Part shown: one piece after another, positions 11,601 to 46,626 of the stretch
How positions within the stretch are numbered: the first letter of the stretch is position 1
Layout of the letters: every line of letters starts with the position of its first letter
Assembly (NCBI GenBank): GCA_000388065.2
Contig: KB932201.1
Source: Fonticula alba ATCC 38817
Taxonomy: Eukaryota > Protista > Nucleariida
Direction: 5' to 3' (one strand)
DNA: 49,318 bases
Translations under genes and position numbers: made by a program
The notes under the pieces: generated by a model
The model's database searches: none
What the model was told of the DNA's origin: nothing
The model's input: the letters and a program-made list of their open reading frames with translations, nothing else

Positions 11601-14600
11601 GGCCGCCGATCAGGGTCAGGCATCGAGTGATGTCTTCGATGAAAGTGCGTGCTGTGCCCCCCCCCCCCCCCCTCCCCCCTCCCCCTTTTCATCCTCGTGA
11701 GCTGCCTATCGCTCCTCGGACGAATGGCCCTAACGCGTGCGCACTTGTCTGCCGGGGGGGGCTCCCCCCTCACAGTCGAGCTCAACCCGAACTTCGCCGA
11801 TGATCGCGATGACTTTGATGATGCCAATGACGACACGGCCTTCGACAGTGCCGACGACTCGGAGGAGTCCGGCGACGAGGATGACGAGCTCCTGGAAGAG
11901 GTCATCACCCCGGATGGCAAGGCCAGTGCGTTTTTGTCCCCCATGCTGCACGTGTATCTTTGTGCAGCCCATGTTCCACCCCCCCCCCCCCTCCATCCGC
12001 TCCTGACAGCTGCCGTTTGCTCCTTCTCCCGGGTCCTCCCCCTTCAAGCCCCCCTCCACGTCCTGCCCCTTTACTCGATTTTGGCCCCGGAGAAGCAGAT
12101 GGTACGTGAGCTTGGGCCCCTTTGATCGCACTTCGGGAGAGGGGTTGTGGTCTTGGCTCGGATCCATCTTGCTGACTTTTGGCCCTGACCCGACGCACCG
12201 GGTGTAGCTTGTCTTCGAGGAGCCGCCCGCCGGCACTCGGCTGTGCGTGGTGGCCACCAACGTCGCCGAGACGTCGATTACCATTCCCGGTATCAAGTAC
12301 GTGGTGGACTGCGGCAAGGCCAAGCAGCGGAACTATGACATGAACACCGGCATCCAGACCTTCAACGTGAGCTGGATCTCCAAGGCCTCGGCGGACCAGC
12401 GCTCCGGTCGTGCCGGCCGTACCGGCCCGGGCCACTGCTACCGCCTCTTTTCCTCGGCCGTGTTCGACAACCACTTCCCACAGTTCTCCGACCCGGAGAT
12501 CGTCGGCATGCCAATCGAAAGTGCGTCACATCGGCTCCTCCCCGGTGCCCATACATGTCACCCTGCATGCTCGCCGGCACACTGGCACACGTGTGCGCGT
12601 GCAAATGGCCCCTGCCGCGGCATCTGACCCGTGTCCCTGGTCCTCTTGCTTTGTCTCCTGGCGGCAGATGTTGTCCTGCAGATGAAGTCCATGAACATCG
12701 ACAACATCGTCAACTTCCCCTTCCCAACGCCACCGGCCCGTCGGGCCATTGAGAAGGCCGAAGAGCTCCTGGTGTACCTTGGTGCTCTGGAAGCCACCTC
12801 CAAGAAGATCATCCAGGCCGGCAAAGTCATTGCCTCTTTCCCCATCTCGCCGCGCTTTGCCAAAATGTGCGTGTGTTTCTCCCCTTGCTGGGGCTTTCTT
12901 TTCCTCCCCCGGCTTCTGTTCTGCCTTTCGATTTTTCTCGCTCTCCCTCTCTCTCTCTCTCTTGGCCTCCTTGAAGATGCATTTTTGCTGTGTGGCTGTG
13001 CCTGTGTTGCTGATACCCCTGGGATGTCCCTGCCATCGTGCTTCGCGTCGTCCAGGCTCATCCTTTCCAAGCAGCGGAATTGCTTGCCCTATGCAATTGC
13101 CATTGTGGCGGCCCTGACCGTGGGTGACCCCTTCATCCAGGAGACTTTCATCGAGGGAGACGGAAATGACGAGCTTGACGCCATGGTCCAGGAGGCTTCC
13201 AGCACCGGTGAGGAGGTCAATCCCCAGCTGCTCAAGCAGATCGCCCAGGCGCAGAAGAAAAATCGCCGGGTGCAGTATCTCCAGGCTCAGGCGGTGCGTG
13301 TCCGGATCCCTGTCCCCTTTCATCCCATGATGCCGGCTGCTCAACATTGACCCATATGCCGGCGCAGAAATTCACCTCCGGCACGCTGCGCAGCGACGCC
13401 CTCAAGTACCTGCGGGCCATCATTGCCTATGACGAGGCCGCGGACCCGGATGCCTTCTGTGAGCAGTATCTCCTCCGGCCGAAGGTACGCCCTGGAGCGG
13501 AATGCCACACCCGTGCCATGCGCCCCTCTCCCCCCCCCCCCNNNNNNNNNNNNNNNNNNNNNNNNNNNNNNNNNNNNNNNNNNNNNNNNNNNNNNNNNNN
13601 NNNNNNNNNNNNNNNNNNNNNNNNNNNNNNNNNNNNNNNNNNNNNNNNNNNNNNNNNNNNNNNNNNNNNNNNNNNNNNNNNNNNNNNNNNNNNNNNNNNN
13701 NNNNNNNNNNNNNNNNNNNNNNNNNNNNNNNNNNNNNNNNNNNNNNNNNNNNNNNNNNNNNNNTGGTCAGGCCATGAACGAGATTCGCAAGCTTCGTCGG
13801 CAGCTGACCAACCTGGTCAACTCGGTGGACAGTCACGCCGGGGCCACCATGCCGCTGACCATGCCGCTGCCGTCTCCGGAGCAGGAGCAGCTCCTGTGCC
13901 AGGCCCTCTTCTGCGGGTTTGTGGACCAGGTGGCCACGCTGAGTGATGCGGCGGCCGCGGCGGCCGTTGCCGGCCCCAATGGCCTGCCTCGTGGGACAGG
14001 CACCGCCAGCCGGCCCTATCAGACCATGTTCCAGGAGGAGCTGACATACATTCACCCGACGTCGTGTGTGGCCCGGCGGGCTGGCGGCCCGGCTCCGGCG
14101 TTCTTGGTCTTCCTGGACCTGGTTCGCACGACCAAGCGCGTCCAGATGAAGACCTGTACGGAAGTCCGGCCGACATGGCTCGCGCGCCTGGGCGCCGGCC
14201 TCTGCCAGTATTCGGACCCGTTGGAGAACCCGCCGGCGCGGTATGTCCCCGAGCGGGACACTTTGGTGGCCTTTTGCGAGGGTCTCTACGGCCCCCGGAG
14301 GTGGATTCTGCCGGTGGTGGAGATCCCCCACCCGGCTGGCTTGGACCGGATGAAGCTCTTCGCGCGGCACCTGCTCGAGGGTGATGTGGCCTTCGGCCTG
14401 CGGGAGCACGCGACCGCCGATCGCCTTATCACCAAGCCGCTGGTCATCCAGAAGCCGTGGACCCATGCGCGGTCTGTGGACTTTGTCCAGGCCCTGGTCC
14501 GGGAGAAGGTCGACTCGAAGCAGGCTCTGCGTCGGATTTGGCTGCGCCAGCCGAAGTTCCTCCTGAAGGAGTACCTCCTCTGGGTGAAGCCGGAGTTCCA

Positions 14601-20040: not shown

Positions 20041-23000
20041 AGAGTCGGGATATCGCAAGGGGCTCCTCTCGCCCCCCCCCCNNNNNNNNNNNNNNNNNNN
20101 NNNNNNNNNNNNNNNNNNNNNNNNNNNNNNNNNNNNNNNNNNNNNNNNNNNNNNNNNNNNNNNNNNNNNNNNNNNNNNNNNNNNNNNNNNNNNNNNNNNN
20201 NNNNNNNNNNNNNNNNNNNNNNNNNNNNNNNNNNNNNNNNNNNNNNNNNNNNNNNNNNNNNNNNNNNNNNNNNNNNNNNNNNNNNNNNNNNNNNNNNNNN
20301 NNNNNNNNNNNNNNNNNNNNNNNNNNNNNNNNNNNNNNNNNNNNNNNNNNNNNNNNNNNNNNNNNNNNNNNNNNNNNNNNNNNNNNNNNNNNNNNNNNNN
20401 NNNNNNNNNNNNNNNNNNNNNNNNNNNNNNNNNNNNNNNNNNNNNNNNNNNNNNNNNNNNNNNNNNNNNNNNNNNNNNNNNNNNNNNNNNNNNNNNNNNN
20501 NNNNNNNNNNNNNNNNNNNNNNNNNNNNNNNNNNNNNNNNNNNNNNNNNNNNNNNNNNNNNNNNNNNNNNNNNNNNNNNNNNNNNNNNNNNNNNNNNNNN
20601 NNNNNNNNNNNNNNNNNNNNNNNNNNNNNNNNNNNNNNNNNNNNNNNNNNNNNNNNNNNNNNNNNNNNNNNNNNNNNNNNNNNNNNNNNNNNNNNNNNNN
20701 NNNNNNNNNNNNNNNNNNNNNNNNNNNNNNNNNNNNNNNNNNNNNNNNNNNNNNNNNNNNNNNNNNNNNNNNNNNNNNNNNNNNNNNNNNNNNNNNNNNN
20801 NNNNNNNNNNNNNNNNNNNNNNNNNNNNNNNNNNNNNNNNNNNNNNNNNNNNNNNNNNNNNNNNNNNNNNNNNNNNNNNNNNNNNNNNNNNNNNNNNNNN
20901 NNNNNNNNNNNCGGGCAGTGCAGGCGGGGGGTGTAGATGCACCCGCGCGCATCGGCCACACGCAGGGGGCCGGGAAACATTAATCGTGCCCGGGGGGCCA
21001 ATGCCCCGGCGTGCCCCTTTTTGCTCAGCGCGAAGACCGCCCAGGGCGCGCGCGCTCTCGCACGAAGGCATATCCTTGCGCCACTCCCCGGCACTTGCCC
21101 GCGAGAGTCGCGCCCTGTGCCTCCCCAGGAAGTTGTTCCCCCGCTGGGGGCATATGGGACACTCGGGAGGCGGGGGGGGGGGTTGGGGGGTCCTGGCCGC
21201 GCGTCGCAAAGGCCTGCAGTGCCCCCGCAAGACCTCTCGCCCCCCCCCGCCCTCTGCCGCCCCCGAGGCCTTGCGCCTCGTGAGAGAGAGGGAGGGCGGC
21301 ACCGGTGCCCACCCGGCCAGCCGGGACATTCATGTGAATAGCCTGGGAGCGTACCCGATCCCCAGGGGCGGGGTGCCAACATTCAACCTCGGGAAGGGAC
21401 ACGCACTTGTGCGATGAGGGTGGGGGATGCGCGCCCGGGCAACATCCCCAGCCTTGGCGCGACTTCGGTGACCTCACACATGGTGGGCGGGGGTGGCTGG
21501 GGCGCCCCGCTCGGGCACAGGGGGCCCTCGGCCCTGGGGGGGGGGGGGGGGGGNNNNNNNNNNGGTCGCGCGGCCGGGGGGTCACAGATGGGGCGGACGC
21601 CCGGGCGGGGGACGGAACGCGGCCAGGCTCCGCGGGGCACATGGGTGCCCGGCACGCGCTGCCCGGCGGTCTGGCGCGGGGCCCGCACCCCAAGGGATGC
21701 AGGCATGCACGCCTGAAAAACCGCGCCCCGCCAGGCGCGGGCCTCGGGCCTCTGCGCATGTGTGGTGTGTGTGTGTGTAGGTGCGCGCTCGTGTAAAAAA
21801 GGGCGCGGCGCCCGTGGTCTCCCGGAGGAGGGACCTAGCTCGGGCTCGAGCCGGGCCGGGTGTCTTCTGTTGTGCCGGCTCCTCCGCGGGGCGCAGGGCC
21901 GGGCGGCTGCTCTGGCGCGCCGGGATCGGTGCGATGGAGCGAAGACACCCGCCGGCGGGCCAGTGCCCCGGAGCCGCCGCCACTCTCGCGCCTCTCGCCG
22001 GCCGTCCTGCCGGTCCGGAGTTGCAGAGGCCCAACCGGAGGACGCGGGGCGAGCGCCGGGAAGGGGGGCCTGGCCGCGGCGCGGCCTCGGTGCGCCCCTC
22101 CTTGCCCGGCGGCCCCGTGGAGCGACGGGAGCCGACTGACTGGCCCCCCGGGCCGCCCTGAGCGCCCCGGCCACGCAGGCGTAGAGGTCAAAATTGAGCA
22201 GGCCCACCAAATTTCCCCTCCCGGGAGGAGGCCCCGACCGGCCGGCCGGTGGCGGTAGCCCCCGGACGTCGGACAGCATGATGAAATGTGCATTATCTAT
22301 TACCGGGACCCGGGGATGAGGCGTATTACATAACAAGGCAAGTGAGGCCAGCGAGCGCCCGGGAGCGAGGTCGTGTGACTCGGTCGCCGCTCCCCGACCC
22401 CGCCGGGGGGGGCCGGGGCGACATCCGCTGAAAGGCCCCTGCCTCTTAGGGCGAGGGGGGGGGGGGGGCCGGGGCGCGGGAGGAGCCATCACCCGGCACG
22501 GTCGCGCCCGCGACCGCCAGAGGCTGCCCGTGCGCCGCCGCCACCAGCACGCCAGAGAAATCGGCCTTTTCACGGGCATCTCCCAGGGCGGGCGTGGGAT
22601 GCTGGGGGATTCACGCCGGCTTGGGGCGCTGCGCCGGTGTTCGCCCACCGCCATCGGGGCCACGCCAAGCTGCGCCCGCGTGCCGGTCCAGCCCGTGCCG
22701 ACGCCCCCCCGCCCCCCTGCCCCCAGGGGATGGGGGCGGGGGCAGGGACGGAGGCCACCCCCCCCCCCGCTGCCCCCCGCCCGCCCGGCTTCACACCTTT
22801 TACACCCGCATCGGNNNNNNNNNNNNNNNNNNNNNNNNNNNNNNNNNNNNNNNNNNNNNNNNNNNNNNNNNNNNNNNNNNNNNNNNNNNNNNGCCCCCCC
22901 CCCCCCCCCCCGAGGCGCTCATGTGGGCGCCGCCGGCGGGCGGGGCGCGCAGAACGCCGGGTCCCAGGTGCGGGACCCGATCGGCCGGCGCGCCCCGGAC

Positions 23001-29460: not shown

Positions 29461-30280
29461 CGGAGTCAGGTAGCAGGAGCTGTCCGCCGATCAGGGAGGG
29501 GAGGAAGAGGGAGTCAGATGCGAGGGGTGGGGGGAGGAGGAAGGGAGGAAGTAGGCAAACAACGGGAGCCAGTGATGCTCAGTCGGGTCAGCGCACCGGG
29601 CGCGGCCATGGCAGGTCGGCCGAAGAGGCGGGTTGTGTGACGGGAGCCCTGGGGTCGGCTCGATCGTCGGAATATTGGAGGGGNNNNNNNNNNNNNNNNN
29701 NNNNNNNNNNNNNNNNNNNNNNNNNNNNNNNNNNNNNNNNNNNNNNNNNNNNNNNNNNNNNNNNNNNNNNNNNNNNNNNNNNNNNNNNNNNNNNNNNNNN
29801 NNNNNNNNNNNNNNNNNNNNNNNNNNNNNNNNNNNNNNNNNNNNNNNNNNNNNNNNNNNNNNNNNNNNNNNNNNNNNNNNNNNNNNNNNNNNNNNNNNNN
29901 NNNNNNNNNNNNNNNNNNNNNNNNNNNNNNNNNNNNNNNNNNNNNNNNNNNNNNNNNNNNNNNNNNNNNNNNNNNNNNNNNNNNNNNNNNNNNNNNNNNN
30001 NNNNNNNNNNNNNNNNNNNNNNNNNNNNNNNNNNNNNNNNNNNNNNNNNNNNNNNNNNNNNNNNNNNNNNNNNNNNNNNNNNNNNNNNNNNNNNNNNNNN
30101 NCCCCCCCCCCCCAAGCCAAGAAAAAGAAAAGTCGACGCTCACGCTCCCAACGGTGGTGGTGCACAGATCGCGCGGGTCCTGGCCCGCGGCGCCCTCCCC
30201 CAACCAATGACTTATGGTGGTCCTGGCTGGGGCCCCCTCGTCGGCTGGCGCCTCGTTCACTTTGCTGCCCAGAGGTCAGC

Positions 30281-30317
30281 ACCGGCCACCACCGGCCACC
30301 ACTGGCCACCACTGGCC
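30281..30317. repeat. 10-bp tandem repeat ACYGGCCACC (~4 copies) in the divergent intergenic region between the Pro-rich gene and RsmH
   Basis: accggccacc accggccacc actggccacc actggcc. Confidence 0.85.
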
Positions 30318-31198
30318 GGCAACGGCGCCAACGGTGTGCCGGATCTCATGCCGGGCCTTCAGATCTGAAGCGAATTTAGGGAATGCCCCCCTCCGTCCCC
30401 ATCCCAGCTCGGCCTCTCCTGGTCGACTCGCGCGTTTGGCCTTGCCCGCCCTCGGTCCTTGCCACTCACACTGACAGATGGCGCGCATGTGTTCACGCAG
30501 CCCCAGTCCGTTCCTGGGCCTCTCGCGCCGCGGGTGGTGTTGGTGGCGGCGGCGGCCACACGCCTCGGCAGACGGTGAGATGCCCGCGGATCGGGGTGTC
30601 ATGGTGGCGCCCTGCGCATGTGATCCTGCCTCCGGCACGCGGCACCCGTCGGCATATCCCCCCTCACGCGGTCGCCCGCTGGCTGCGTGTGCTCCAAGCC
30701 GATGGGCGACGCTTGCCTTGCCCCCATATTCCCAGCCCGGGCCCGGCCTGTGTGTGCGTGAGGGGGGGGGGGNNNNNNNNNNNNNNNNNNNNNNNNNNNN
30801 NNNNNNNNNNNNNNNNNNNNNNNNNNNNNNNNNNNNNNNNNNNNNNNNNNNNNNNNNNNNNNNNNNNNNNNNNNNNNNNNNNNNNNNNNNNNNNNNNNNN
30901 NNNNNNNNNNNNNNNNNNNNNNNNNNNNNNNNNNNNNNNNNNNNNNNNNNNNNNNNNNNNNNNNNNNNNNNNNNNNNNNNNNNNNNNNNNNNNNNNNNNN
31001 NNNNNNNNNNNNNNNNNNNNNNNNNNNNNNNNNNNNNNNNNNNNNNNNNNNNNNNNNNNNNNNNNNNNNNNNNNNNNNNNNNNNNNNNNNNNNNNNNNNN
31101 NNNNNNNNNNNNNNNNNNNNNNNNNNNCCCCCCTCCGTCCTCCCTTCCACCGCGCCCGGTCTTGGCTCGAGCTCACATCATTGGTGCAGAGGGAAAAC

Positions 31199-34100
31199 AT
31201 GCTTCGCTTGCCTGGCTTGTTCCTCCGGTCTCAGCCGCTTCGGGCACTCGAGCGCTCGACCTTCGTTGGCCTTGTGGCGCGCAGCAAGGACGAGCCCCGG
31301 GCTGTCCCAGCGCGCGCGTACGGCACCGGACGCCGCCGACATGGACGCGCTCCGTCCGGCAGCGCGGCCACCGCCACGGCCTTCGGCCACTTTGAATCGG
31401 AGCCGGATGCCCAGCTGTCGCCCTTCGATGAGTCGGTCCCTCCGCCGGTGTCCCCGTTCTTCGGGATGGGCCAGCCGCAGGTCACACATGGCCGGCGCCG
31501 AGCGGGCGCCCACGCCACTCCCAGCGTTCCGCCGGGCACCACCTTCTCCCAGGTGGCCAGTGTCGGTGAGGACCTCTTCCACCAGTCGATGGAAATCCCC
31601 CAGGTGAATGCCCTGCTGAAGCAGGTAAAGCACCCGCTGGTGCAGGAGACCTTCAGCGAGCGCGATCGCATCACCCTCCGTGGGAATGCCCTCGGCTTGC
31701 TGGAAGTGGAGGAGGAGCTGCGCCAGGCGCGCGAGATGATGCTGGATTCCGAGGGCCGCAGTCTGCCCGGGCGTGGAGATGCCTTCCATCGCCGGGAGGC
31801 GGAGTTCTATTACCAGGACTTGCAGCGGCAAATCCAAATCCCGGCCGAGCGACTGGCGGCCATCGCCGAGACGGTGTCCAGCGAGCTGGAGGAGCTGGAA
31901 AAGCAGCGCCTTTCCAAGTGCAACAATGTTCCCCTGCCCATCATGTTCGATGTGCCGCCGAATGCCACCGCCGAGGAGCTTCTCGGCCTGCTGGGGCTCA
32001 CCCCCCGGAAGGGGGGCGTCGTCCTGCCGACCGAATGCCGGGGCTCCTTCGAGCGCTTTGTCTTCATCCTGGCGGCGCAGATGGAGCGCATCCACTTCCG
32101 CGCCAGGCAGCTGGTGAGTCTGGAGCAGCAGGTCCCCGTGGCCGATCGGCCCAAGTTGCACAAGCAACGTGCCGAGCTGGCCACCGCCCTGCGTGAGATG
32201 GATGCCCGCATGGCGCCGCAACTGCGCGAGCTCATTCTCGATCGCCAGCGGCGCTTCGAGGCCGGCGAGAATCCGGACCTCGACGAGCCGGAAGAGTTGA
32301 GCCCGGAAATGCTCCAGCGCGTGGCCCGTCTCACCCAGATGGAGGGCGATTCGGCCACCATGAATCCCAAGCTGGCCGTCGAGGCCTATCTGTCCCTGCG
32401 GGCGGCGGTCGACGCCAAGCGCCTGTCCCTGCCGGCGGCCGAGGCGCGGCTCCTCTTCCCGGAGCTGTCGAAGGCCGAGCGCCTGCGCTTTGCCTATCGG
32501 GACTTGATGCGATACAGCCGCACCGATGCCGGCACCCTGCGCCCGGATGAATGCTTCCCCGATCTGTCCACCGAGCAGGGCCAGACCGAGGCCTTCCTGG
32601 ACAATCTGTACGACGGCTTGCAGATGAACGGCCGCACGGCCCTCAACATGCTCAAGGCCGGTGGCCGCCAGGCGGAGATGGAGATGTCCAAGCTTCAGAA
32701 CATGACCCCTGCCCAGATCATGCGCGAAACCATGAAGGAGCGCCAGGAGGAGCATCTTGCTCAGTTGGACGAAGTGATGGAGGTCGTCAGCCGGCCGGCG
32801 CCCATCAGCCTGAAGAGCATCACCGGCAATCCGGCGGCCGAGGCTGCCACCGCCACCGCCACCGCCGACCAGGAGTCAGACGCGGCCTTCGATTCGGATG
32901 ACGCCTTTGATCCGGACGCCCAGCCCAGCGTCGGGTCTGGCATCATGAGCAGCCTGACATCGGATCTGCGCGAGGACCGTCCCGGGCCGTCGGCTCGGGT
33001 GGAGGATCTCCTGCAGTCGGTGGATGACCTGACTGATGTGGCCCAGCTGGAGCGTGCCATCGAGCGCATGGAGCTGTCCGGTGCCGCGGCCGCCGAGCGG
33101 GCCCTGCTGCATGGGCTTCGGGATATCGGCCACCAGGCGGCCTCGGTGCGGGACCTCATCTCGCAGATGGCCGCCATGGATGCCGAAATCCGGGCGAGCA
33201 ACCTGGACAATGTGTCGGCCCGGAAGATGTTCAGCAACCCGGACAGCCAGGACATGAATGACATCCTTGTTCGGAAGTTGCACCTGGAGCTGCAGCTCAA
33301 TGTGGCCAAGAAGCGCCTGGACAGCATGGTGACCGATCTGGAGCCGGCCTTGGCGGCCAGTCGGTCGCGCCTGCGTGCCCGGACCGATGCCCTGGTCCCG
33401 GCCGAGGGGAGTATCTCCTACAATGAGCAGCTTTTGCGCGATCTGCCGGAGGACCTGCGCCAGGTGGTCCGGCTGCTGGATGACCCGGACTCGAGCCTGG
33501 ATCAGGTGTTGGCTGTTCTGGGCCAGGTTTCCGGGGATTTGGGCCTCGGCGACCAGGGCGGCATCGATGACACCGACGCCGAGGATGACAACGACGATAA
33601 TTGGGGCTTTGTGCCGGGGGAGAAGCGTCCCGCTCCGGGTGCCACTGGCGCCCGGGCCTCCGGCGTCAATGCCTCGGCCGCCGGCGGTAGTAGTCCCCCC
33701 GCCGAGGGGGCGGATGGGGTCAACTCCGCCGAGCAAATTTCCCTGCATGTGGATGGCTTCAAGGACGGCCAGCCGGAGTACTCGGTGGTCCGGGAGGTGG
33801 TCGACCAGAAGACTGGCGCGGTGACCTCGCGCGATGTGGAGCATGTGGGCAGCATGCCGCGCCTGCCGCACACGCCGGTGCTCCTGCCGGATGTCCTGCA
33901 TTATCTCTTCCCCCATCCGAAGGGCATCTATGTGGATGCCACCTTCGGGGCGGGTGGCTACACCCGGGGGATCCTGGCCGCCACGGGCGGGCAGGCGCGT
34001 GTCATCGGCATCGATCGTGACCCGTCTGTCTTTTCGCCTGACATGCACAATCTGGAGCCCGACGCGCCGGTGATCCTGCGTGCTGGGCGTTTCTCCGACC

Positions 34101-34661
34101 TGAGCATGCACCTGGACACCGTCCTCTCTGGCCAGTATATGGCCGAGTTCATGGGGGATGCGGCGCTGACCGGGGTCGTTGGTGCCGAGAGTGGCCTGGT
34201 GGATCCGGTGACTGTGCCGGATGTCCTGCTGGCTGAGAGCCCGCTGTATCCCTTCCCGGCGACCAGCATCGTGACGCGCACTCTGCACGAGCGCCGGTAC
34301 CCTCCGGTGCTGGAGTCCCTGCTGGGGAGCAGCATGGCGGGGTACCATGCCCCGGCGCCGCCCATGCCTCTGCGTGTTGATGGGATTGTCTTTGATTTGG
34401 GCGTGTCGTCCATGCAGTTGGACCAGGCCGAGCGGGGCTTCTCCTTCCGCTCGAACGGTCCCCTGGACATGCGCATGTCGGCTGGTCAGCTCCCGGAGCA
34501 GCCGAGCGCCCACTCGGGCATCAGGTCGATGGCCATGCCGCCCCGTTCGGCGGCCGATGTGGTCAATGACCTGCCTGAGGCCATGATCTCTGACATTATC
34601 TTCCGCGTACGTCACTGTCCCCCCCGCCCCCGCCCACACAGCGCGCACATTACACCCCCCC

Positions 34662-34703
<42 letters not shown>

Positions 34704-34725
34704 CTCTCTCTCTATCTCTCTCTCG

Positions 34726-34756
<31 letters not shown>

Positions 34757-34768
34757 CCGCTCTCTCTC

Positions 34769-34801
<33 letters not shown>

Positions 34802-35673
34802 TCTCTTCTTTTCCTCCCCTCGCCTTCCCTGGTTTATCTCCCTCTCTCTCCCTCTCTCACACACATGCATGCACCCTCTGCTTCTTGGCTGACGCTCCAA
34901 CGACGAACAAAGTACGGCGAGGAGCGCTACCACCGGCGCATCGCCAAGGCCATCGTCGAGCACCGGACCACCCATGGTGCCATCAAGGACACCTTTACTC
35001 TGGCCAACATCGTTCGCGGGGCCTACCCGGCCGATGCCCGGCGCCAGGCCTTTGTCGATCCGGCCACGCGCACCTTCCAGGCCATCCGGATTTTCGTCAA
35101 CGACGAGGTGCGTCTGTTGCATGGTGACTCTGCTCCTGTGTGAGCATCTTTTCACCCTGTGGTGGGGTGCCGCGCTCCGGGCTGCCTCCTTTCTGGGCGA
35201 CTGGCCATGCGGTGTATCGACTTGGGATCGGTGAGGGGGGGTTTCTTTCTTTCTCCCCTTTTCATCCTACTGACCGGAGGACAAAAACACCCCCTTCCCC
35301 AACATGTCAACATTTTTTTTCTGCGATCCAGCTGCGCGAGCTTCTCCAGGCTCTGATCCATGCCGAGAGCATGCTGGCCCCTGGCGGCCGGCTGGTCGTG
35401 GTGTCGTACCACTCGCTGGAGGACCGTGTGGTGAAGGACTTCATCCGGCGCTGCTCGGCCCCACGGTCTGTGTCCACCGACCCCGAGATGGAGATGGCCC
35501 AGCCGTCTCTCACCTGCCTGACCAACCGCGTGGTGACCCCGAGCAACGAGGAGGTCATGATGAACCCGCGCTCGCGGTCGGCCAAGTTGCGCGCGGCTGA
35601 GCGCACGACCAACGGCCCTGTGGCCGAGCGCCTGTACCGCCAGCTGCAGGAGGCCAACCTCTCGCACTCGTGA
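31199..35673 (+). CDS. METTL15: Mitochondrial rRNA m4C methyltransferase (RsmH/MraW/METTL15 family) with an ~890-aa N-terminal extension; exons 31199-34606, 34913-35107, 35332-35673; 1314 aa
   Basis: [55 protein letters not shown]...GPLDMRM, IIFR|[22 protein letters not shown]|[28 protein letters not shown]. The N-terminus [17 protein letters not shown]...ARAYG resembles a mitochondrial presequence. The start codon is not proven, because an N-gap lies just upstream. Confidence 0.9.
34674..34800. repeat. Imperfect (CT)n microsatellite in RsmH intron 1
   Basis: Long CTCTCT run with occasional CTAT/CTCG units, preceded by a C homopolymer. Confidence 0.9.
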
Positions 35674-37230
35674 AAAGGATGGCGAGCGCCTGCCACGCCG
35701 TGTGGCTTTTGTCGAGCACGCCAAAGGGAGGGAGAGATCCCCCCCCCCTTTTTTTCAGCTCTAGCACAAGGGGGGGAAGCACGAGCGGTGCCATCCCCGT
35801 CCCAGAAGGATGGGCGAGAGAGGCACCGCATACGTGTCTTTGGAAGAGAGTGAGGGGGGGGGGGGGAAGAACCGCGGCTGGGGTGGCCCTACCATTAGAT
35901 GCCAACCCTCTGCCACCCCAGCCGAGCCCACGGTCAAATGTCGCCCTCACTCGTCCCCCTCTTCGACCCCCCCCCCCCCCCCATATGCCTGCATGTAGGA
36001 GAAGCAGCAAACCTCCACCGTCCTCAGGCGACGCTCATGCTGCCTGGGCAATGGGTCTCACTAATGCATGCGCCAGTCTTGTTTTTGCCTGTGTGTGTAT
36101 GTGCGTGTGCGCGTCGGTGTCTGCGCGCGGGGGGCGGCCGCCCTCGCCCTCACGCGGTGACTGGGCAGGAAGGTGGGGGATTTCTCAGGCTCTGCAACGA
36201 GCCACGCAGAGTGGGCAGGTCGTTTTCGATCGTACGTGCATGTGCGCGCGCACCGCGCTAGGGGGAGAACGGCTGGCACACAGGCAGGCCCGGGGGGCCG
36301 GGGGCCGAGAGGCCAGCTCCTTGATCCCCCGCGCCCGGGATCCCCCCCCCCCCCCCCGGTTGCGGTGGGAGTTCGCATAACGGAGGGTTCCTGCCTGGCC
36401 AGCCGAAAGAATGGCGCCCGGCTCCGGGCCGGGGGGGGGGGGCCATACGCGCGCCGCCACGGAACCATACGCCACCTCCCAGCCCCCCAGGGTCTGGGCA
36501 CCGAGGCGGGAGGGCGAGGAGTCTGCCGGACCAGGGCCCCCCCGGGGGCGCGGGGGCGGAACAGGGGCACTCATGCCTTTCTGCCTTGGACCGGGGGCGC
36601 TCCTCCTGCGCCTCGGCAGCGAGAAAAAGGCCCGGGGCCAGGGGCGAGCATCGGAACATAGGCCCAAGAGCCTTTCCTGTTCCTTGGCTCAGTCCTCGAG
36701 GGAGAGTGAGTGTCCCTCGCCCGTCCGCCCCCCCCCCCCCCCCGCCCCGCGCCCCCGGGGGGAGGCTGGGAGTGACGAATGTCGTTACGCCAGCGCACCC
36801 CCGGCCACGGCTGGCTGCGGCCGAACATCTGAGGATGGGGCCAGCGCATCCCGGGAAAGAAGCAATCCCCTTCTGGGCTGGCAATCGCGGGTCGATCATA
36901 TTCCCCGCTTCTGGGGGCGCGAGTAGGGGGGGGGGGGGGGCTCGCGCCGGGAAGACCCGGGCGGCCGGTTCGGGGAGAATATTCCCCCCACCACATTCGG
37001 AAGGCTCCTCGAGAGCGAGGCGCACATAGAAGCCCTCTGGGGCAGCGGGGCCGCCTGGGCCGAAACGCTCGCCCAAGCCAAGATGGGTGCGGGGGGCCCT
37101 GCGAGCCATGAGGGGCGCCGCCCCCTGCGGCGGAGTTTCCCGCCCCCGTTCCCTCGGGTGCGTCCGCGCCCCGGCAAGGATGCCGCTATACGGCTCCCCC
37201 GCCCCCACTCGAAATCCCCGCTGCATGCGG

Positions 37231-37261
<31 letters not shown>

Positions 37262-37508
37262 GCCCGCTCGTGGTTGGTAGTCGCTGGGTGCACGCGGGTG
37301 TTCCACCTTCACAGCCCCCCCCCCCCCCCAAGCTCCTCCACCGCACCCTCCTCACGCCGCCACTGGCTGGCGCTTTTTCGGGCCCCCTTGCCAGGCACCC
37401 CTGGCAACGCTGGGGGCTGGCAGCCCCCTCCCTTCCCCCCTCCCCCTCTTCCCCTCTCCCCGCCCTCTCCTCTCCCCGTCCTCTCCACCACCCTACACAG
37501 CGTCAACC

Positions 37509-39365
37509 ATGTTCCGCAGCAAGCCCAAGATGGACATCCGGGATGTCAAGAACATCCAGGAGGGTCTGAAGGGCATCTACAAGAATAAGGTCAAGCCCAC
37601 CGAGGAGCATTACATGTTCACGGAGTTTCACTCCACGCGTCTGATGGATTCGGACTTCGACGCCAAGCCCATGGTCCTGCTGCTGGGTCAGTATTCCACC
37701 GGTAAGACGAGCTTCATCAACTTCCTCATCGAGCGCGAGTTCCCCGGAAGCCACATCGGCCCGGAGCCGACCACCGACAAGTTCATCGCCGTCATGCACA
37801 ATCGTGAGGACCGCGTGACCCCGGGTAACGGTGCGTGTCCTCATCTCTCCCTCTCTCTCTCTCTCTCTCTCTCGCTCCTCCTAGTGCCCTGGGTTTATGT
37901 GTGCTATGCTGTCACATCTTCATTTTCCCCTCGATTCCACGTTGTTCCCCCCCCCTCCTCCTCCCATACTGACGTGCCTGTACATCGCAGCTGTCGCCGT
38001 CCAGCCGGACAAGCCCTTCCGCGGGCTGGAGATGTTCGGCGGTGGTTTCCTCAGCAAATTCCAGGCCAGTGAGTGTAACGCCCCCCTGCTGGAGGAGATT
38101 ACCTTCATTGATACGCCCGGTGTGCAGGCCGGCGAGAAGCAGCGCAGCGGCCGTGGCTACGACTTCACTCAGGTGGCCTCGTGGTTTGCCGAACGCGCGG
38201 ATCTGATCCTGCTCCTGTTCGACTGCCACAAGCTGGATATCTCGGATGAGTTCAAGAAGACCATCGAGTGTCTGCGGGTACATTGCCACCACATATACAC
38301 ACATGCATACCCCTTCCCTCGCGCTCCTCAGCCCCCTCGCTTTTGCCCGTGCTCCTCCTGCTGGGACAGTGGCACTTCCCTCTGCATCCTGTCCTGACAC
38401 CATGGTGCCACCACGCCCCTCGCCACCACGCCACCGGAAATGACATCGCCCACCGTGCTGGCACCCAAACAATCAGGGCCATGATGACAAGATTCGCGTC
38501 GTCCTCAATAAGTCGGACATGGTCAACACCCAGCAGCTAATGCGTGTGTATGGTGCCCTCATGTGGTCTCTGGGTAAGGTGATTCGCACGCCGGAGGTGG
38601 CCCGTGTGTACATCGGCTCCTTCTGGGCCAACCCCCTGCATTACACGGAAAATGCCCCGCTCTTCCAGGCCGAGCAGGCGGATCTCCTGCGTGACCTGCG
38701 CAACCTCCCCTCCAATGCCATGATCCGCAAGGTCAATGAGCTGGTCAAGCGCACCCGCCAAGCACGCGTGCACGCCATCATCATCAGCCACCTGCGCAAG
38801 CAGATGCCCGCCATGTTTGGCAAGAGCACCAAGCAGGAGGAGCTGCTGGCCGACATGCGCAATGTCTTTGAGGAGATCCAGCGGGCCAACAAGCTCCCGG
38901 CCGGCGATTTCCCTGATCCGGAGAAGTTTGTCCAGCTCTGTCGGAACATGGACTTCTCCAAGCACTTCAACAAGTACAATGCCAAGGTACGTATGCGAGT
39001 GGCCGGGGCAGCTCACAAGCTCATGCTTAAATTGCCATCATCAGCGGGGGGGAGGGGGGGGGGGGGGGGCCAATCCAGAACTGTCTCTTTGCTTGCCCCT
39101 CCTGTCACATTGCGTTTCCCTGACCTTTGCTCGTTCCCTTATTCTTTTTTTCCCCTCTCCCTCTCCCTCTTGCTCACGTTCTTTATCCCTTCTGTAGCTG
39201 ATCAACAGCCTCACCGAGGTTCTCGATAAGGACCTTCCTGCCCTGATGACTCGCTTCCCGCCGGAGGTTCTCTCCGGGGAGAAGGCCGGCAACTCGGCTG
39301 ATGTCATCTTGAGCACTGGTGCGTGTTTTTTCTCGGCACAAGCTGCCGCCTTTTCTCTCCAGCCC

Positions 39366-39405
<40 letters not shown>

Positions 39406-39883
39406 AACGCACGCACCAAACACACAATGCTCACGGTGTGCCATCCAACTAGATATGGGCTTTGCCAACCGCATCACCCAGGGCGGCATCAACAACCCGA
39501 ACCCCCTGGCCCGCGATGCTGTGGTCAGCCCGTCGGCTTCGCGTGGCTCGGCCCTGGCCCTGCCCGCCCCGGCGGCCCCGGCCGACCCGTGGGCTGTCTC
39601 GGCCAGCGAGCGGTCCAACTTGATCGCCGAGTTCCATCGGCTCAATCCGCCGAACGGCCTGCTCAGCGGTGGCCAGGCCAAGGAGGTCCTCCTGCGCACC
39701 GGGCTCGACAATGAGTCCCTCAAGCGCATTTGGTTCCTCAGTGATGCCGATCAGGACGGTTTCCTCTCGCAGGACGAGTACGTGGCGGCCCTGGTCCTGG
39801 CCCGCGGTGTTCGCTCCGGCATGGCCATCCCGCACAGCCTGCCGGCCTCCCTGCAGTCGGGTGGCTCGAGCAACCCCTTCTAA
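37509..39883 (+). CDS. EHD1: EH-domain-containing dynamin-like ATPase (EHD/RME-1 family); exons 37509-37830, 37991-38277, 38477-38986, 39198-39318, 39453-39883; 556 aa
   Basis: KPMVLLLGQYSTGKT P-loop, HIGPEPTTDKF, PGNA..V..DKPF, FIDTPG, LLFDCHKLDISDEF, GHDDKIRVVLNKSD, YGALMWSLGKVIRTPEVARVYIGSFW, and a C-terminal EH domain (LKRIWFLSDADQDGFLSQDEY). All four introns are phase-consistent. Confidence 0.95.
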
Positions 39884-40026
39884 ATGCATTGTCGGGGGCC
39901 ATGCTGGCTCTCGGTCCTTCTCCCTCCTACCCCCCCCCCCAGTCGGGTGGCTCGAGCAACCCCTTCTAAATGCATTGTCGGGGGCCATGCTGGCTCTCGG
40001 TCCTTCTCCCTCCTACCCCCCCCCCC
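39855..40026 (+). repeat. Perfect 86-bp tandem duplication spanning the EHD stop codon
   Basis: 39855-39940 equals 39941-40026 (AGTCGGGTGGCTCGAGCAACCCCTTCTAA...CCTAC11). Confidence 0.92.
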
Positions 40027-40712
40027 TTTTACGCGTTTGCGGCCTCCTCTCTTTGCGCTTCCTTTTCATCACACGGGGCCATGCGTGTGCGCCCACGCCG
40101 CAGAAGAGCAGGAGACCCTTAGTAAGGGAGGAGGGAGACTGTACATAGTACCTGGGGCAGTGCGCGGAGGCGAGGGATCACGATCAAAGGGGAGCGATCA
40201 AGGGACCGACATGCACGTGTACACACGATAAAACCGGCATGCGGGTCCGGACTTCTTTCCTTCCCTCCCCCTCCCTCTCTTCCTCCTGTCGCATTTGGAA
40301 AGCCCATGCCATTCACACCTCCTCCCCCTCCTCCTCCTTCCCCTCCCTACGCCTTTCCTTGTACAAATAAAATCCACAAAATCCGGACACAACTGCTTTG
40401 CTCGAACCTTTGGGGAGAGATCATGCGCGAGGAGGGGTAGGGAGAGAGAGAGAGAGAGGGGGGGGGGGAGGGAGGAAGGTAGTCGGGACAAACCAGGCGC
40501 GAATGTGGGTGGTAATGTACATTGTGTTGGCGCAGAAGAAAATGCGAAAGCCGACATGGCATATCCCCAGCATTGAGGGAGACTGGGAGACGAGAGGAGG
40601 GAATATCGCTCCCGGTCGGGGCGGGGCGCGTCCTGATAGCACATGCACACACACACGCACAGGGAAAGGGGGGCAGGGAGAGAGAGGGGGGGGGGGAGAT
40701 GAATAACGCCCA

Positions 40713-41393
40713 TCAAGTGGCGATCTTCTCAATGTACTCCGGGGGGAAAACACCGTACTCGCCGCGAGTCTCGCCCTGGGCGTCATGGTGGGAACAAAAA
40801 ATGGCAGCGGTGTGTGCGTGAGACGGGGGCGTGTGTCGAAAAGAGGTGGTGGGGATTTTCCGCTCGATCGGCGGGCGCGCACCTCCCAGCACTTAGGATC
40901 AACGTCGGAAGACTGCTTGAAGACGTAGACCAGCTCGTCTGTGTGCCCCACACAAGGCGCAGAGGGACGCAACAGGCAAGAAAAGGCATTGGGGGTGAAT
41001 AAACACACATACACACACATGGTGACAGGCCATGCGGCGAGGCTGCCACCGCTGTCGATGTTGTTTGTGCGCTTGCCAGCTGGGGCGAGCCATGCCAGAG
41101 GAAAGAGGCGAAAAGGGAATGGCCGCAAGAGACCGGACAGCCGGGCACCTGATGCGACGTACCTTGGAAGAGAGTAAGATACTTGTTGGACTCGGGAATG
41201 TAATCGCGCACCACACGGCCAACCATCAGGATCTTGGGGGCCGGAACGGTGGGGACATCGTCATCCCAGTCGCTACCGCTGTCGGAGTGGTTCTGCATGC
41301 GGCAAGGAGGGCGGGGGGGACATGTCAGGGCCAATAGGCGGAACTGGTGCGTGCGTGAATGGGCAGGCCGGACGGGATGCAACATACCGGCAT
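40713..41393 (-). CDS. Small SH3-only protein with an N-terminal acidic-Trp motif (84 aa); exons 41393-41388, 41292-41163, 40938-40883, 40775-40713
   Basis: CACCACC-ATG-CCG|GTATGT micro-exon. The spliced product MPNHSDSGSDWDDDVPTVPAPKILMVGRVVRDYIPESNKYLTLFQDELVYVFKQSSDVDPKCWEGETRGEYGVFPPEYIEKIAT* carries SH3 hallmarks (DY, W.G, G.FP..Y). Three introns are phase-consistent (255 nt). Confidence 0.85.
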
Positions 41394-42234
41394 GGTGGTG
41401 GCGGTGGTGGGGGGGGGGGGAGGGGGGGTAGAACAATCAAGAGGGGGGTGGAGGGAAAAATGCAGACAGGTCTGACTGTGCCCTCACCAGGCCATGCCGG
41501 GAACCCTGGCGGAGGCCCCTTTAAGTTCAGGACACCCTGAAGCTCGGCCCGGAGGACAAGGCTCGGACCGTGAGTCTCTCGCGCCGCCGGCCTCCTCCCT
41601 TGGGCAGGGTCGAGACGCAGGGAGGCCGTAGGTCCGGACGGGGCCGGGCGAGAAAGAGTGGGGACACCACAGGGGCCGAGGCAGGCACTGGAACTTTGGA
41701 AGAGAAAGTGGAGGGGAATTTCGATCAGCGAGGGCTGGCATTCAGTACAGTGATTTGGGCGCATGGCGTGACATATCGGCTGATCTTTGGCCCCGGTTGG
41801 GAATGCCCCTCGGTTAAGGGGGGCCGTCCTTGCTTAGCTCTCTTTCTTTACTGGCCCAGCTGTTTGTCATTGCGAATCCTGCGCCGCGGCCCTGCGACAG
41901 ATTAAGATCTCCGTTCCTCCGCCATTTCTCGCCCGGACCCGCATCTGGTCGAGGATTCTGGCAAGGGTGGGACAAGCACCACTCGTGGGTTGCCACGATC
42001 GCGCCCTCCTCCGGCAAGGACACCAAACGCGAAGGATTGCCTCTTGGTGTGTCAATTCATGAATGGGAGCAGCGTGACCGGGAATACATGTCGGGTGCCG
42101 CAGTCGACGGTGGGTGACACCACGCACTCGCAACAAAGTCAGGAACTCTCCGCGCAATTGTTGGCGATCGATTTGACCGATATGACTCAAGTTGTGTGGC
42201 AGGAAGGAGAGACGGAGGAAGCGAGCGAGCGAGC

Positions 42235-42240
<6 letters not shown>

Positions 42241-42306
<66 letters not shown>
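42241..42306. repeat. (GA)33 microsatellite
   Basis: Read directly from the sequence. Confidence 0.95.
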
Positions 42307-42307
<1 letters not shown>

Positions 42308-43336
42308 GGGGAATGAGCGGGCTGTGTTGGAAGATTGCCGTCCGCTCGCTTCACGACCACACACTAAATGATCGGCGTCGTGTGCCTGAAGCGGCAGGCC
42401 CCGAGGCATGCACGGCGCAGCAGCCTCGGTCACATCGCCTCGAACATCGCCAATGGGTGCATGCGTGGCAGAGACACAACTAGGAGGAAGGTGATAAAAA
42501 TACAGTATATTGAAGAGATCTGGGTGGGAGGGGGTGGTGGGGAGGGGGAGGGTGGTGCGACAGGCAGTCGATAGGGCTATTAATAAGCCCCATTCGGTGG
42601 CTTTCTCTCGTCCGCCAGGCACAGCCACCTGTGGNNNNNNNNNNNNNNNNNNNNNNNNNNNNNNNNNNNNNNNNNNNNNNNNNNNNNNNNNNNNNNNNNN
42701 NNNNNNNGGGGGCATATACGTACGCACGCACGCGCGCGCAAACAGCCAGAGAACATATGCACATAGGGCACTAGTACACACACACACACTCTGAGAGGAG
42801 GAGGGGGCTCCAGTTTCTCGTACTCTCTCTGGGGTTACTACGGGGGAGGAGAAGGGAGCGGATGTGGAGGGGGGAGGAGAGAGGGATAAACAAGGACGAG
42901 GATGGGGGACGTTGACGGGTATGATACACATGCGCGCGCACGCGCGCGCGCGCGCGCGCGCGTACGTGTGTGCTTGTGTGTGTGTGGATGGGTGGGTGTG
43001 CGTATGCGATGTAGCATACACCACACAAATGGACTTGCGCACACGCGCGTCGCGAGAGGGAGAGAGAGAGAGAGAGGGGAGCGGCAAGCTGGATGCTCGC
43101 GCCGCGGATGTCTGCAGTGAAGAGGGAGAGGGGGAAGAGAGAGGGAGAGACACGGGCGGGAAAGGCGCCCGCGCATGGACCCAGATCCAGACCCACACGC
43201 CACTACCACCGAGAGGAGGGGAAGGAGGAAGAGAAAGAGACGAAGGGGGAGAAGAGTCACATGCCGACAGAGAGACACACACACACACACACGTTAACAC
43301 CGACACGCACGCGCGAGATCGATGGCCTCCACGCGA

Positions 43337-45554: not shown

Positions 45555-46626
45555 NNNNNNNNNNNNNNNNNNNNNNNNNNNNNNNNNNNNNNNNNNNNNN
45601 NNNNNNNNNNNNNNNNNNNNNNNNNNNNNNNNNNNNNNNNNNNNNNNNNNNNNNNNNNNNNNNNNNNNNNNNNNNNNNNNNNNNNNNNNNNNNNNNNNNN
45701 NNNNNNNNNNNNNNNNNNNNNNNNNNNNNNNNNNNNNNNNNNNNNNNNNNNNNNNNNNNNNNNNNNNNNNNNNNNNNNNNNNNNNNNNNNNNNNNNNNNN
45801 NNNNNNNNNNNNNNNNNNNNNNNNNNNNNNNNNNNNNNNNNNNNNNNNNNNNNNNNNNNNNNNNNNNNNNNNNNNNNNNNNNNNNNNNNNNNNNNNNNNN
45901 NNNNNNNNNNNNNNNNNNNNNNNNNNNNNNNNNNNNNNNNNNNNNNNGGGGAGGGTAGCAAGATCCGGGGGCGCGTGCGCCCCACCACGGGGGGGGGGGT
46001 GGAACGAGAGGGTTCGGCCCCGACCCCCCCCCTTCGCCAACGGTAGGGAAGACGGGCTGGGGAGGGCGCTATCGCCTGACCGGTGGATCCCCCGGGCCCG
46101 CGGCAGGTTGAGGCGCCAGGTGCCTAACGGTGGGGACGCGTGCAAGAAAACGGCCGATCTGCGGAAAACCGACAGACACCGGGAAGCCAGTCGCGGGACT
46201 GTGGACGGGGTGGGGGGCTAACCGTGTGGGAAACCGGCGCATCTGGCGCCAGGCAGGGAGTGGGGGGGTGCCCTGGCTGCCGTCGTATCTCTCTGCCTGC
46301 TTGGGGAGTGCGGCCTCGAGGACGGCCACACGGGCACGCCCGTGTGGCGGGGTCTCCGTTGCCGCGGGGCCAGTGTGCCCGGGCCGCCCCGGATCAGCCA
46401 GAAAAAGCCAGCCCCAAGGGGACGCGCCCCCTCCCTCGCTGTCCCCCCCGCCCCCCCCNNNNNNNNNNNNNNNNNNNNNNNNNNNNNNNNNNNNNNNNNN
46501 NNNNNNNNNNNNNNNNNNNNNNNNNNNNNNNNNNNNNNNNNNNNNNNNNNNNNNNNNNNNNNNNNNNNNNNNNNNNNNNNNNNNNNNNNNNNNNNNNNNN
46601 NNNNNNNNNNNNNNNNNNNNNNNNNN

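What the first reader, a model, noticed from the sequence alone, without database searches (positions are those of the whole stretch)
31199..33868. RsmH/METTL15 methyltransferase fused to an ~890-aa N-terminal helical/coiled-coil region
Seen: the RsmH motif HTPVLL starts at residue 891. The extension and the first part of the methyltransferase lie in one 3408-nt exon with no stop or obvious splice break, so this is unlikely to be a gene-model fusion. The extension has a presequence-like start, long E/L/R/Q-rich helical stretches (e.g. [36 protein letters not shown]), non-repetitive cores ([44 protein letters not shown]) and an acidic/Ala-Gly linker. Established: bacterial RsmH is ~310 aa and human METTL15 ~400 aa, acting on SSU rRNA during mitoribosome assembly. 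Inference: the extension may be a lineage-specific mitoribosome SSU assembly scaffold or a captured second factor, i.e. an undescribed assembly module.
Basis: partly seen in the sequence, partly recalled or inferred. Interest (0 to 1): 0.72.

Follow-up and report, generated by a model that had tools for sequence, protein, structure and literature searches.

The report
RsmH/METTL15 methyltransferase with orphan N-extension
The amoeba Fonticula alba has one three-exon gene that puts about 885 residues of helical and floppy sequence, matching nothing else in public data, in front of an intact RsmH/METTL15-type ribosomal RNA methyltransferase; what the added part does is unknown.

Summary
Observation confirmed. 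The window is Fonticula alba. The gene (31199-34606, 34913-35107, 35332-35673, + strand) translates exactly to the public protein H696_00637 (1314 aa).

- **Enzyme:** Residues 886-1314 are a complete RsmH. They score 268 bits on TIGR00006 against a cutoff of 154. All conserved motifs are present, and both introns restore conserved motifs.
- **Extension is coding:** Residues 1-885 are real coding sequence in the same frame. There are no stops in 890 codons, against 13-21 expected. Codon bias matches the enzyme part in every 180-nt window, and the gene sits in one gapless contig.
- **Extension is an orphan:** It has no Pfam, NCBIfam or PDB match and no relative among 1.84 billion representative proteins. 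It has no internal repeats.
- **Predicted shape:** The models are low-confidence. They show two helical blocks (117-530, 601-780) between disordered, acidic linkers, behind an Arg-rich presequence-like start.
- **Other long RsmH proteins:** These are neighbour-gene fusions, so extensions like this are not routine.

The "assembly scaffold" or "captured factor" reading has no direct support. Earlier notes of this scan, which I did not test, report giant orphan tails on several mitochondrial small-subunit ribosomal proteins elsewhere in this genome, so this looks like one case of a lineage-wide pattern. The scan did not note this gene itself before.

The parts
30773..31127 (.). Assembly gap (run of N) 71 nt upstream of the start codon. 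The promoter, 5'UTR or conceivably an upstream exon may be hidden here.
31199..31372 (+). Start codon (A at -3) and Arg-rich presequence-like N-terminus, residues 1-58: 12 K/R against 3 D/E, rich in S, T, A and L. Amphipathic moment is only modest.
31199..31546 (+). Residues 1-116, predicted without regular structure (pLDDT 24-36).
31547..32788 (+). Helical block 1, residues 117-530: about 15 predicted helices, pLDDT 35-62, no repeats, no family match.
32789..32998 (+). Acidic Ala/Asp/Ser-rich disordered linker, residues 531-600.
32999..33538 (+). Helical block 2, residues 601-780. Folded alone it gives two long helices (about 629-666 and 681-732), pLDDT up to 92, mean 66. Only generic helical-hairpin structure matches.
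33539..33853 (+). Acidic/Gly/Ala linker, residues 781-885. The coding score is weakest here, but this frame is still the best of six.
33854..33856 (+). Met886, which aligns with the native first Met of E. coli RsmH and lies where alphaproteobacterial RsmH proteins begin. Probably the retained ancestral start, and a possible internal start.
33854..34606 (+). First part of the RsmH domain in exon 1: HTPVLL 891-896, FGAGGY 916-921, IDRDP 938-942, DLGVSS 1066-1071, GPLDMRM 1087-1093.
34121..34372 (+). Lineage-specific insertion of about 80 residues inside the methyltransferase domain (about residues 975-1058), before the DLGVSS motif. No family match.
34607..34912 (+). Intron 1 (GTACGT...AG), 306 nt, 83% C+T with a (CT)n microsatellite. 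Its length is a multiple of three with no in-frame stop. Its removal restores the conserved IIFxYGEER motif.
34913..35107 (+). Exon 2, 65 codons, RsmH profile positions 170-219.
35108..35331 (+). Intron 2 (GTGCGT...AG), 224 nt. Its removal restores the conserved FVNDEL motif.
35332..35673 (+). Exon 3, the C-terminal part of the RsmH domain ([16 protein letters not shown]) and stop codon TGA at 35671-35673.

Best explanation
Shown: one nuclear gene of Fonticula alba encodes a 1314-residue protein. Its last 429 residues are a complete, motif-intact RsmH-type SSU rRNA cytosine-N4 methyltransferase. Its first ~885 residues are genuine coding sequence with no detectable relative, predicted as two helical blocks joined by acidic disordered linkers. 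Inferred: the Arg-rich N-terminus directs import into mitochondria. There the C-terminal domain methylates the C1402-equivalent cytidine of the mitochondrial SSU rRNA late in small-subunit assembly, as METTL15 does in mammals. The extension is a non-catalytic, lineage-specific appendage that arose in front of the retained ancestral start (Met886). It is one case of a wider inflation of Fonticula's mitochondrial-translation proteins. If it has a role, the likeliest is a flexible helical docking or tethering arm that holds the enzyme on an enlarged pre-SSU particle. My odds are about 1 in 4 for a specific docking role. The remainder is mainly a tolerated, largely neutral expansion, with small shares for the rivals listed below.
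For: - Gene model equals public protein H696_00637.
- RsmH identity: PF01795 in all exons; TIGR00006 equivalog 268 bits against cutoff 154; E. coli RsmH 5e-58 and mouse/human METTL15 about 3e-56; every invariant column of an alignment with six bacterial RsmH proteins is kept.
- Extension is coding and in frame.
- The whole gene lies in one gapless contig, 31128-42634.
- Orphan status.
- Helical/disordered layout.
- Met886 aligns with the bacterial start, and no presequence follows it, so import would need the distal N-terminus.
- Other long PF01795 proteins are neighbour-gene fusions only.
- Scan notes report giant orphan extensions on Fonticula mS26, mS29, mS22, uS2m, uS10m and several other enzymes. 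These are untested leads.
- Precedent that an appended part of Mettl15 makes assembly-factor contacts: in T. brucei the C-terminal part binds Mettl17 (bioRxiv 10.1101/2024.12.18.629302).
Against: - No transcript or protein evidence was obtainable here, so a single mRNA and a full-length product are not shown.
- Mitochondrial targeting rests on composition only, and the helical amphipathic moment of the first 40 residues is modest.
- The structure models are low-confidence (mean pLDDT 42 and 66), and nothing links the extension to ribosomes.
- With no relatives, purifying selection on the extension cannot be measured.
- The enlarged-mitoribosome context comes from unchecked notes.
Confidence: 0.65

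Rival explanations
1. Captured second factor: the extension was once an independent mitochondrial protein, fused upstream of RsmH and perhaps cut off again after import. From my own knowledge, tandem mitochondrial precursors such as S. pombe Rsm22-Cox11 or yeast Arg5,6 behave this way.
For: Met886 aligns with the ancestral RsmH start, and a ~105-residue disordered linker separates the two parts.
Against: No free-standing or fused homologue of the extension exists in 1.84 billion representative proteins or in the 5.8-billion word search. It has no domain. The segment before Met886 is acidic, not presequence-like, so no internal processing signal is evident.
Confidence: 0.08
2. Two products: the working enzyme is made from Met886, by an internal promoter or internal initiation. 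The upstream 885 codons are then translated only in a minor long isoform, or belong to a separate transcript.
For: Met886 has a good start context (A at -3) and sits exactly at the ancestral start. Scan notes report other Fonticula genes with an intact ancestral start behind an extension, and one case with two mRNAs (untested).
Against: A protein starting at Met886 has no presequence and begins directly with the catalytic domain, so it could not reach mitochondrial rRNA by the usual route. The upstream frame has no stop and full codon bias right up to Met886, so it cannot end as a separate protein without an undetected frame-changing splice. Only one weak donor-like motif exists in the exon, and no C+T-rich intron-like stretch.
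Confidence: 0.1
3. Not a real extension: a chance open frame in GC-rich DNA, or an assembly or annotation artefact.
For: GC-rich DNA gives long spurious ORFs, for example the 525- and 590-aa antisense ORFs. An assembly gap lies 71 nt upstream.
Against: Three-base periodicity and RsmH-trained codon scores are as high in the extension as in the enzyme part. None of 2000 shuffles was open. There are no gaps inside the gene. The antisense ORFs also cover the proven RsmH exon and have no family match, so they are by-products of the sense codon bias.
Confidence: 0.03

Closest known systems
Human/mouse METTL15 (PDB 7PNX, 7PNV, 8IPI), mitochondrial 12S rRNA m4C methyltransferase
   Same: Same enzyme family (E about 3e-56) with the same conserved SAM-binding and catalytic motifs. 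Expected to be a late mt-SSU assembly factor with an N-terminal import signal.
   Different: METTL15 is about 407 aa, with only about 60-70 residues before the HxPV motif. The Fonticula protein has 890 residues there, plus an ~80-residue insert in the domain. In my small tree the Fonticula domain sits with bacterial RsmH and not with chytrid and fish METTL15, but a single eukaryotic clade is not rejected (AU p = 0.075).
Bacterial RsmH (E. coli 3TKA; alphaproteobacterial RsmH of about 324 aa)
   Same: 50-57% identity over the conserved parts. Passes NCBI's RsmH equivalog cutoff. Met886 aligns with the bacterial start.
   Different: Bacterial genes sit in the dcw cluster (mraZ-rsmH-ftsL-ftsI) and have no extension. 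This one is a spliced nuclear gene with an 885-residue addition.
Trypanosoma brucei mt-SAF14 / Mettl15 (PDB 6SG9 chain FF, 474 aa)
   Same: A mitochondrial RsmH homologue whose lineage-specific added part (residues 402-470) makes contacts with another assembly factor, Mettl17, on an enlarged mitoribosome precursor. This is a functional precedent for the docking-arm idea.
   Different: The addition is C-terminal and about ten times shorter. Sequence similarity is weak (E = 4.8e-5). There is no similarity to the Fonticula extension.
Other inflated mitochondrial-translation proteins of Fonticula alba (scan notes: mS26, mS29, mS22/mS45, uS2m, uS10m, tRNase Z, RsmE-like)
   Same: A conserved core with a long orphan extension in the same genome.
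   Different: Those are mostly structural ribosomal proteins with C-terminal tails. This is an assembly enzyme with an N-terminal extension. No sequence similarity between the extensions was detected, since one search found no second Fonticula protein. I did not check those notes myself.

Membership tests
RsmH / MraW methyltransferase (PF01795, TIGR00006) | Profile match above the curated cutoffs | tested here: met
   PF01795: 105.3, 40.1 and 80.3 bits for the three exons against cutoff 27. TIGR00006 equivalog: 268.3 bits against 154.3 for residues 886-1314.
RsmH / MraW methyltransferase (PF01795, TIGR00006) | Conserved SAM-binding and catalytic motifs (HxPV, FGxGG, DRD, DLGVSS, GPLDMRM, HSLEDR, NPR-RSA-LR) | tested here: met
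   All columns invariant among six bacterial RsmH proteins are kept in the Fonticula protein. Aligned to E. coli RsmH and mouse METTL15.
RsmH / MraW methyltransferase (PF01795, TIGR00006) | N4-methylation of the C1402-equivalent cytidine of SSU rRNA | not testable with these tools
   Needs biochemistry or rRNA modification mapping.
METTL15 (eukaryotic mitochondrial orthologue group) | Groups with other eukaryotic METTL15 in a tree | tested here: inconclusive
   In a 26-row tree from a biased sample, Fonticula falls among dcw-cluster bacterial RsmH and apart from chytrid and fish. The AU test for one eukaryotic clade gives p = 0.075, not rejected.
METTL15 (eukaryotic mitochondrial orthologue group) | Mitochondrial import signal and localisation | tested here: inconclusive
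   First 58 residues have 12 K/R against 3 D/E and are rich in S, T, A and L, but the hydrophobic moment is only 0.17-0.39. No targeting predictor or localisation data were available.
Any known domain or family for the extension (residues 1-885) | Significant sequence or fold match | tested here: not met
   No hit from Pfam or NCBIfam, PDB sequences, the two large protein searches or the Atlas. Foldseek and Atlas structure searches gave only generic helical hairpins at E > 0.3.
Canonical coiled coil | Long helices with heptad periodicity | tested here: inconclusive
   Long helices are predicted. A 3.5-residue hydrophobic periodicity stands out in only two of six (462-530, 684-732), and it was not tested against shuffles.

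The most novel reading that the evidence does not exclude
The extension is a purpose-built docking module that co-evolved with the giant orphan tails reported on Fonticula's mitochondrial small-subunit proteins. On this reading the amoeba has a greatly enlarged mt-SSU, and its assembly enzymes carry matching lineage-specific arms. That would be a new, independently evolved case of mitoribosome and assembly-machinery expansion, outside trypanosomes and ciliates and within the sister lineage of fungi.
Probability: 0.2. Interest if true: 0.65.

Novelty: new variant of a known kind. Interest (0 to 1): 0.38.

Why it matters
RsmH/METTL15 is among the most size-conserved rRNA modification enzymes, at about 310-470 aa from bacteria to trypanosomes. 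A 1314-aa version whose extra 885 residues have no relative anywhere is an outlier.

On its own it is a curiosity of a fast-evolving, GC-rich protist genome. Other reports of this scan describe giant tails on Fonticula's mitochondrial small-subunit proteins. Taken with those, it suggests that this organism's mitoribosome and its assembly pathway are unusually enlarged. That could be tested directly by cryo-EM of purified mitoribosomes and precursors.

It also gives a clean case, with the ancestral start codon still visible at Met886, for studying how long orphan coding sequence is added in front of a conserved enzyme.

Tried and rejected
1. **Transcript evidence.** Single-mRNA status is untested.
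2. **Family scans of the extension.** I scanned it whole and in five pieces at E up to 10. Only sub-threshold noise came back: Apolipoprotein 0.046, Abhydrolase_9 0.27, Nuf2-like 0.4.
3. **Relatives of the extension.** The word-index search and the exhaustive phmmer search both returned only the protein itself.
4. **ESM Atlas feature search**, on the whole extension and on residues 117-530: no usable hit.
5. **AlphaFold2 without an alignment.** Residues 1-890 gave mean pLDDT 42. Residues 596-785 gave 66. Foldseek against PDB and the Atlas shape search gave only generic helical hairpins such as CINP, FliJ, EnvC and SH3BP5, which I reject as uninformative.
6. **Self-comparison for internal repeats:** none.
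7. **Hidden introns in the extension.** There is one GTGAGT at 32114, inside a high-scoring coding stretch, and no C+T-rich stretch like the two real introns. Rejected.
8. **Antisense ORFs of 525 and 590 aa.** They have no family match, and one overlaps the proven RsmH exon. Rejected as by-products of the codon bias.
9. **Horizontal transfer of the RsmH domain from bacteria.** The free tree suggests it, but the AU test does not reject eukaryote monophyly and my sample was picked by similarity to Fonticula. Left open.
10. **Literature.** I found nothing on Fonticula mitoribosomes or on METTL15 with long extensions.

Full report
**What is there.** The window is from Fonticula alba. The translated extension retrieves one protein at 100% identity, H696_00637, 1314 aa, on scaffold KB932201.1 of assembly GCA_000388065.2.

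Reading the DNA gives a three-exon gene on the + strand:
- Exon 1 is 31199-34606 (3408 nt) and ends at a GTACGT donor.
- Intron 1 is 34607-34912.
- Exon 2 is 34913-35107.
- Intron 2 is 35108-35331.
- Exon 3 is 35332-35673, ending in TGA.

This model translates exactly to the public protein. I searched the exons one by one, by reference. For anything that needed the spliced protein I used the public record P0001 by its id. No hand-joined sequence was sent to a search tool. The join was made only inside a script, to compare it with P0001.

**The enzyme part.**
- PF01795 matches in all three exons.
- Residues 886-1314 score 268.3 bits on NCBI's RsmH equivalog model, whose cutoff is 154.3.
- Against solved structures the best matches are E. 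coli RsmH (5e-58) and mouse and human METTL15 (about 3e-56). T. brucei mt-SAF14 is a distant match.
- In an alignment with six bacterial RsmH proteins, every invariant column is kept: HxPV, FGAGGY, DRDP, DLGVSS, GPLDMRM, GEER, PATRTFQ, HSLEDR and NPR-RSA-LR. The two splice junctions fall inside ungapped conserved motifs, which confirms both introns.
- The domain carries an extra ~80 residues (about 975-1058) before DLGVSS, and a smaller insert after GPLDMRM.
- Met886 aligns with the native first Met of E. coli RsmH. It lies where alphaproteobacterial RsmH proteins start.

**Is the extension real coding sequence?** In a genome of 65-70% GC an open frame alone means little. The antisense strand has ORFs of 525 and 590 aa, with no family match, and one of them overlaps the proven RsmH exon. 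I therefore tested coding statistics.
- GC3 is 0.77-0.90 and GC2 is 0.35-0.60 in every 300-nt window from 31199 to 34606.
- A codon-usage model trained only on the RsmH exons scores the RsmH frame best of all six frames in every 180-nt window. Values in the extension (0.2-0.7 bits per codon) are as high as in the enzyme part. The lows fall at the presequence and at the acidic linker, 33539-33720.
- The 890 codons have no stop. Shuffles give a mean of 20.6 stops, or 12.8 when codon positions are preserved, and none of 2000 shuffles was open.
- The only strong donor-like motif (GTGAGT at 32114) lies in a high-scoring coding stretch. No C+T-rich stretch resembles the real introns.
- The whole gene lies in one gapless contig, 31128-42634, so it is not a scaffolding join.
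- One caveat: a gap (30773-31127) ends 71 nt before the ATG with no stop in between, so an upstream exon cannot be excluded. The ATG has A at -3 and opens an Arg-rich, acid-poor segment, which fits a true start.

**What is the extension?** Nothing known.
- There is no Pfam or NCBIfam family, even in pieces at E up to 10.
- There is no PDB sequence match at E up to 10.
- There is no relative in the 5.8-billion word search or in an exhaustive phmmer search of 1.84 billion representative proteins. There is also no second Fonticula protein, so it is not a module shared with other inflated proteins.
- The ESM Atlas gave nothing usable.
- There are no internal repeats.
- AlphaFold2 without an alignment gives mean pLDDT 42. 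It predicts coil at 1-116, 531-600 and 781-890, and helices at 117-530 and 601-780.
- Residues 596-785 folded alone reach pLDDT 66, and up to 92 in two long helices.
- Structure searches return only generic helical hairpins at E > 0.3.
- Heptad-like periodicity appears in two of six long helices only.

So "helical with disordered acidic linkers" stands, and "coiled-coil" is unproven.

**Are such extensions routine?** No. I searched with the RsmH part while admitting only proteins of 723-2300 aa. This found eight others. All carry domains of neighbouring genes: FtsI, MraZ and Mur ligases in bacteria, a transposase in a fish, and ABC and GTPase domains in a chytrid. The nearest relatives of the domain are alphaproteobacterial-type RsmH proteins of about 324 aa, at 50-57% identity.

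**Origin of the domain.** A 26-row tree places Fonticula among bacterial RsmH. Its two nearest rows are in dcw clusters. It falls apart from chytrid and fish METTL15. My bacterial rows were chosen by similarity to Fonticula, and the two other eukaryotes have long branches. The AU test does not reject one eukaryotic clade (p = 0.075). I leave this open.

**How it most likely works.**
- Shown: an intact RsmH enzyme is encoded in one frame behind 885 orphan codons.
- Inferred from established knowledge of RsmH and METTL15: it makes m4C at the C1402-equivalent position of mitochondrial SSU rRNA during late small-subunit assembly.
- Inferred: the distal N-terminus serves for import. The argument is that nothing presequence-like lies next to the domain, so a product starting at Met886 could not enter mitochondria by the usual route.
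- For the extension I commit to a non-catalytic appendage added in front of the retained ancestral start. I put about 1 in 4 on a real docking or tethering role on the pre-SSU particle. The remainder is mainly tolerated, largely neutral expansion, with small shares for the rival explanations.
- A precedent exists: T. brucei Mettl15 uses its added C-terminal part to bind Mettl17.

**Context from this scan (leads, not tested by me).** Notes on other pieces of this genome describe giant orphan extensions on mS26, mS29, mS22/mS45, uS2m and uS10m. They also describe extensions on a tRNase Z, a DTWD1 enzyme and MIS12, and an insertion-laden RsmE-like methyltransferase. This changed my reading. The gene is best seen as one case of a lineage-wide pattern that seems concentrated in the mitochondrial small subunit, not as a unique fusion. 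I found no paper on this.

**What could not be done.** There is no transcript evidence in this report. No nucleariid genome is reachable with these tools, so conservation of the extension in Parvularia or Nuclearia is untested beyond the blank protein searches.

**Verdict.** The enzyme is ordinary and intact. The extension is real and orphan, and its function is unknown. The "assembly module" reading is possible but unsupported. Novelty: a new variant of a known kind. Interest is moderate, at 0.38.

Noticed in passing
window 34607-34912: Intron 1 is a (CT)n-rich, 83% pyrimidine stretch of 306 nt, a multiple of three, with no in-frame stop. Intron retention would therefore insert 102 Ser/Leu/Pro-rich residues into the methyltransferase domain and would not truncate it. 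This is why the mechanical ORF runs from 30383 to 35143.
   Followed up: partly
window 34121-34372: An ~80-residue lineage-specific insertion lies inside the RsmH domain, between the second SAM-binding strand region and the DLGVSS motif. It has no family match.
   Followed up: partly
window 30207-30578: The public annotation has a 75-aa, Pfam-less gene squeezed between two assembly gaps (29684-30101 and 30773-31127) just upstream of the RsmH gene. The region shows no three-base periodicity in any + strand frame (minus-strand frames not examined), so the model looks doubtful. It could instead be promoter or 5'UTR sequence.
   Followed up: partly
window 31178-32755 and 32876-34648, minus strand: Long antisense ORFs (525 and 590 aa) mirror the sense gene. 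They are by-products of GC3-rich codon usage, not genes.
   Followed up: yes
P0001 residues 886-1314 against P0002, P0004 and bacterial RsmH: In a small tree, Fonticula's RsmH domain groups with dcw-cluster bacterial RsmH and not with chytrid and fish METTL15. This raises the question of a separate bacterial origin. The AU test is not significant (p = 0.075).
   Followed up: partly
window, ten runs of N (e.g. 13542-13763, 20082-20911, 29684-30101, 45555-45947): The scaffold is heavily gapped. Gene models that cross these gaps need care.
   Followed up: no
window 37509-39883, + strand (L001 16311-18685): The downstream neighbour is an EHD-type dynamin-like ATPase of normal size (556 aa). An FMN reductase (211 aa) lies upstream, and an HMG-CoA synthase (566 aa) lies further downstream. 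Protein inflation is therefore not universal in this neighbourhood.
   Followed up: no
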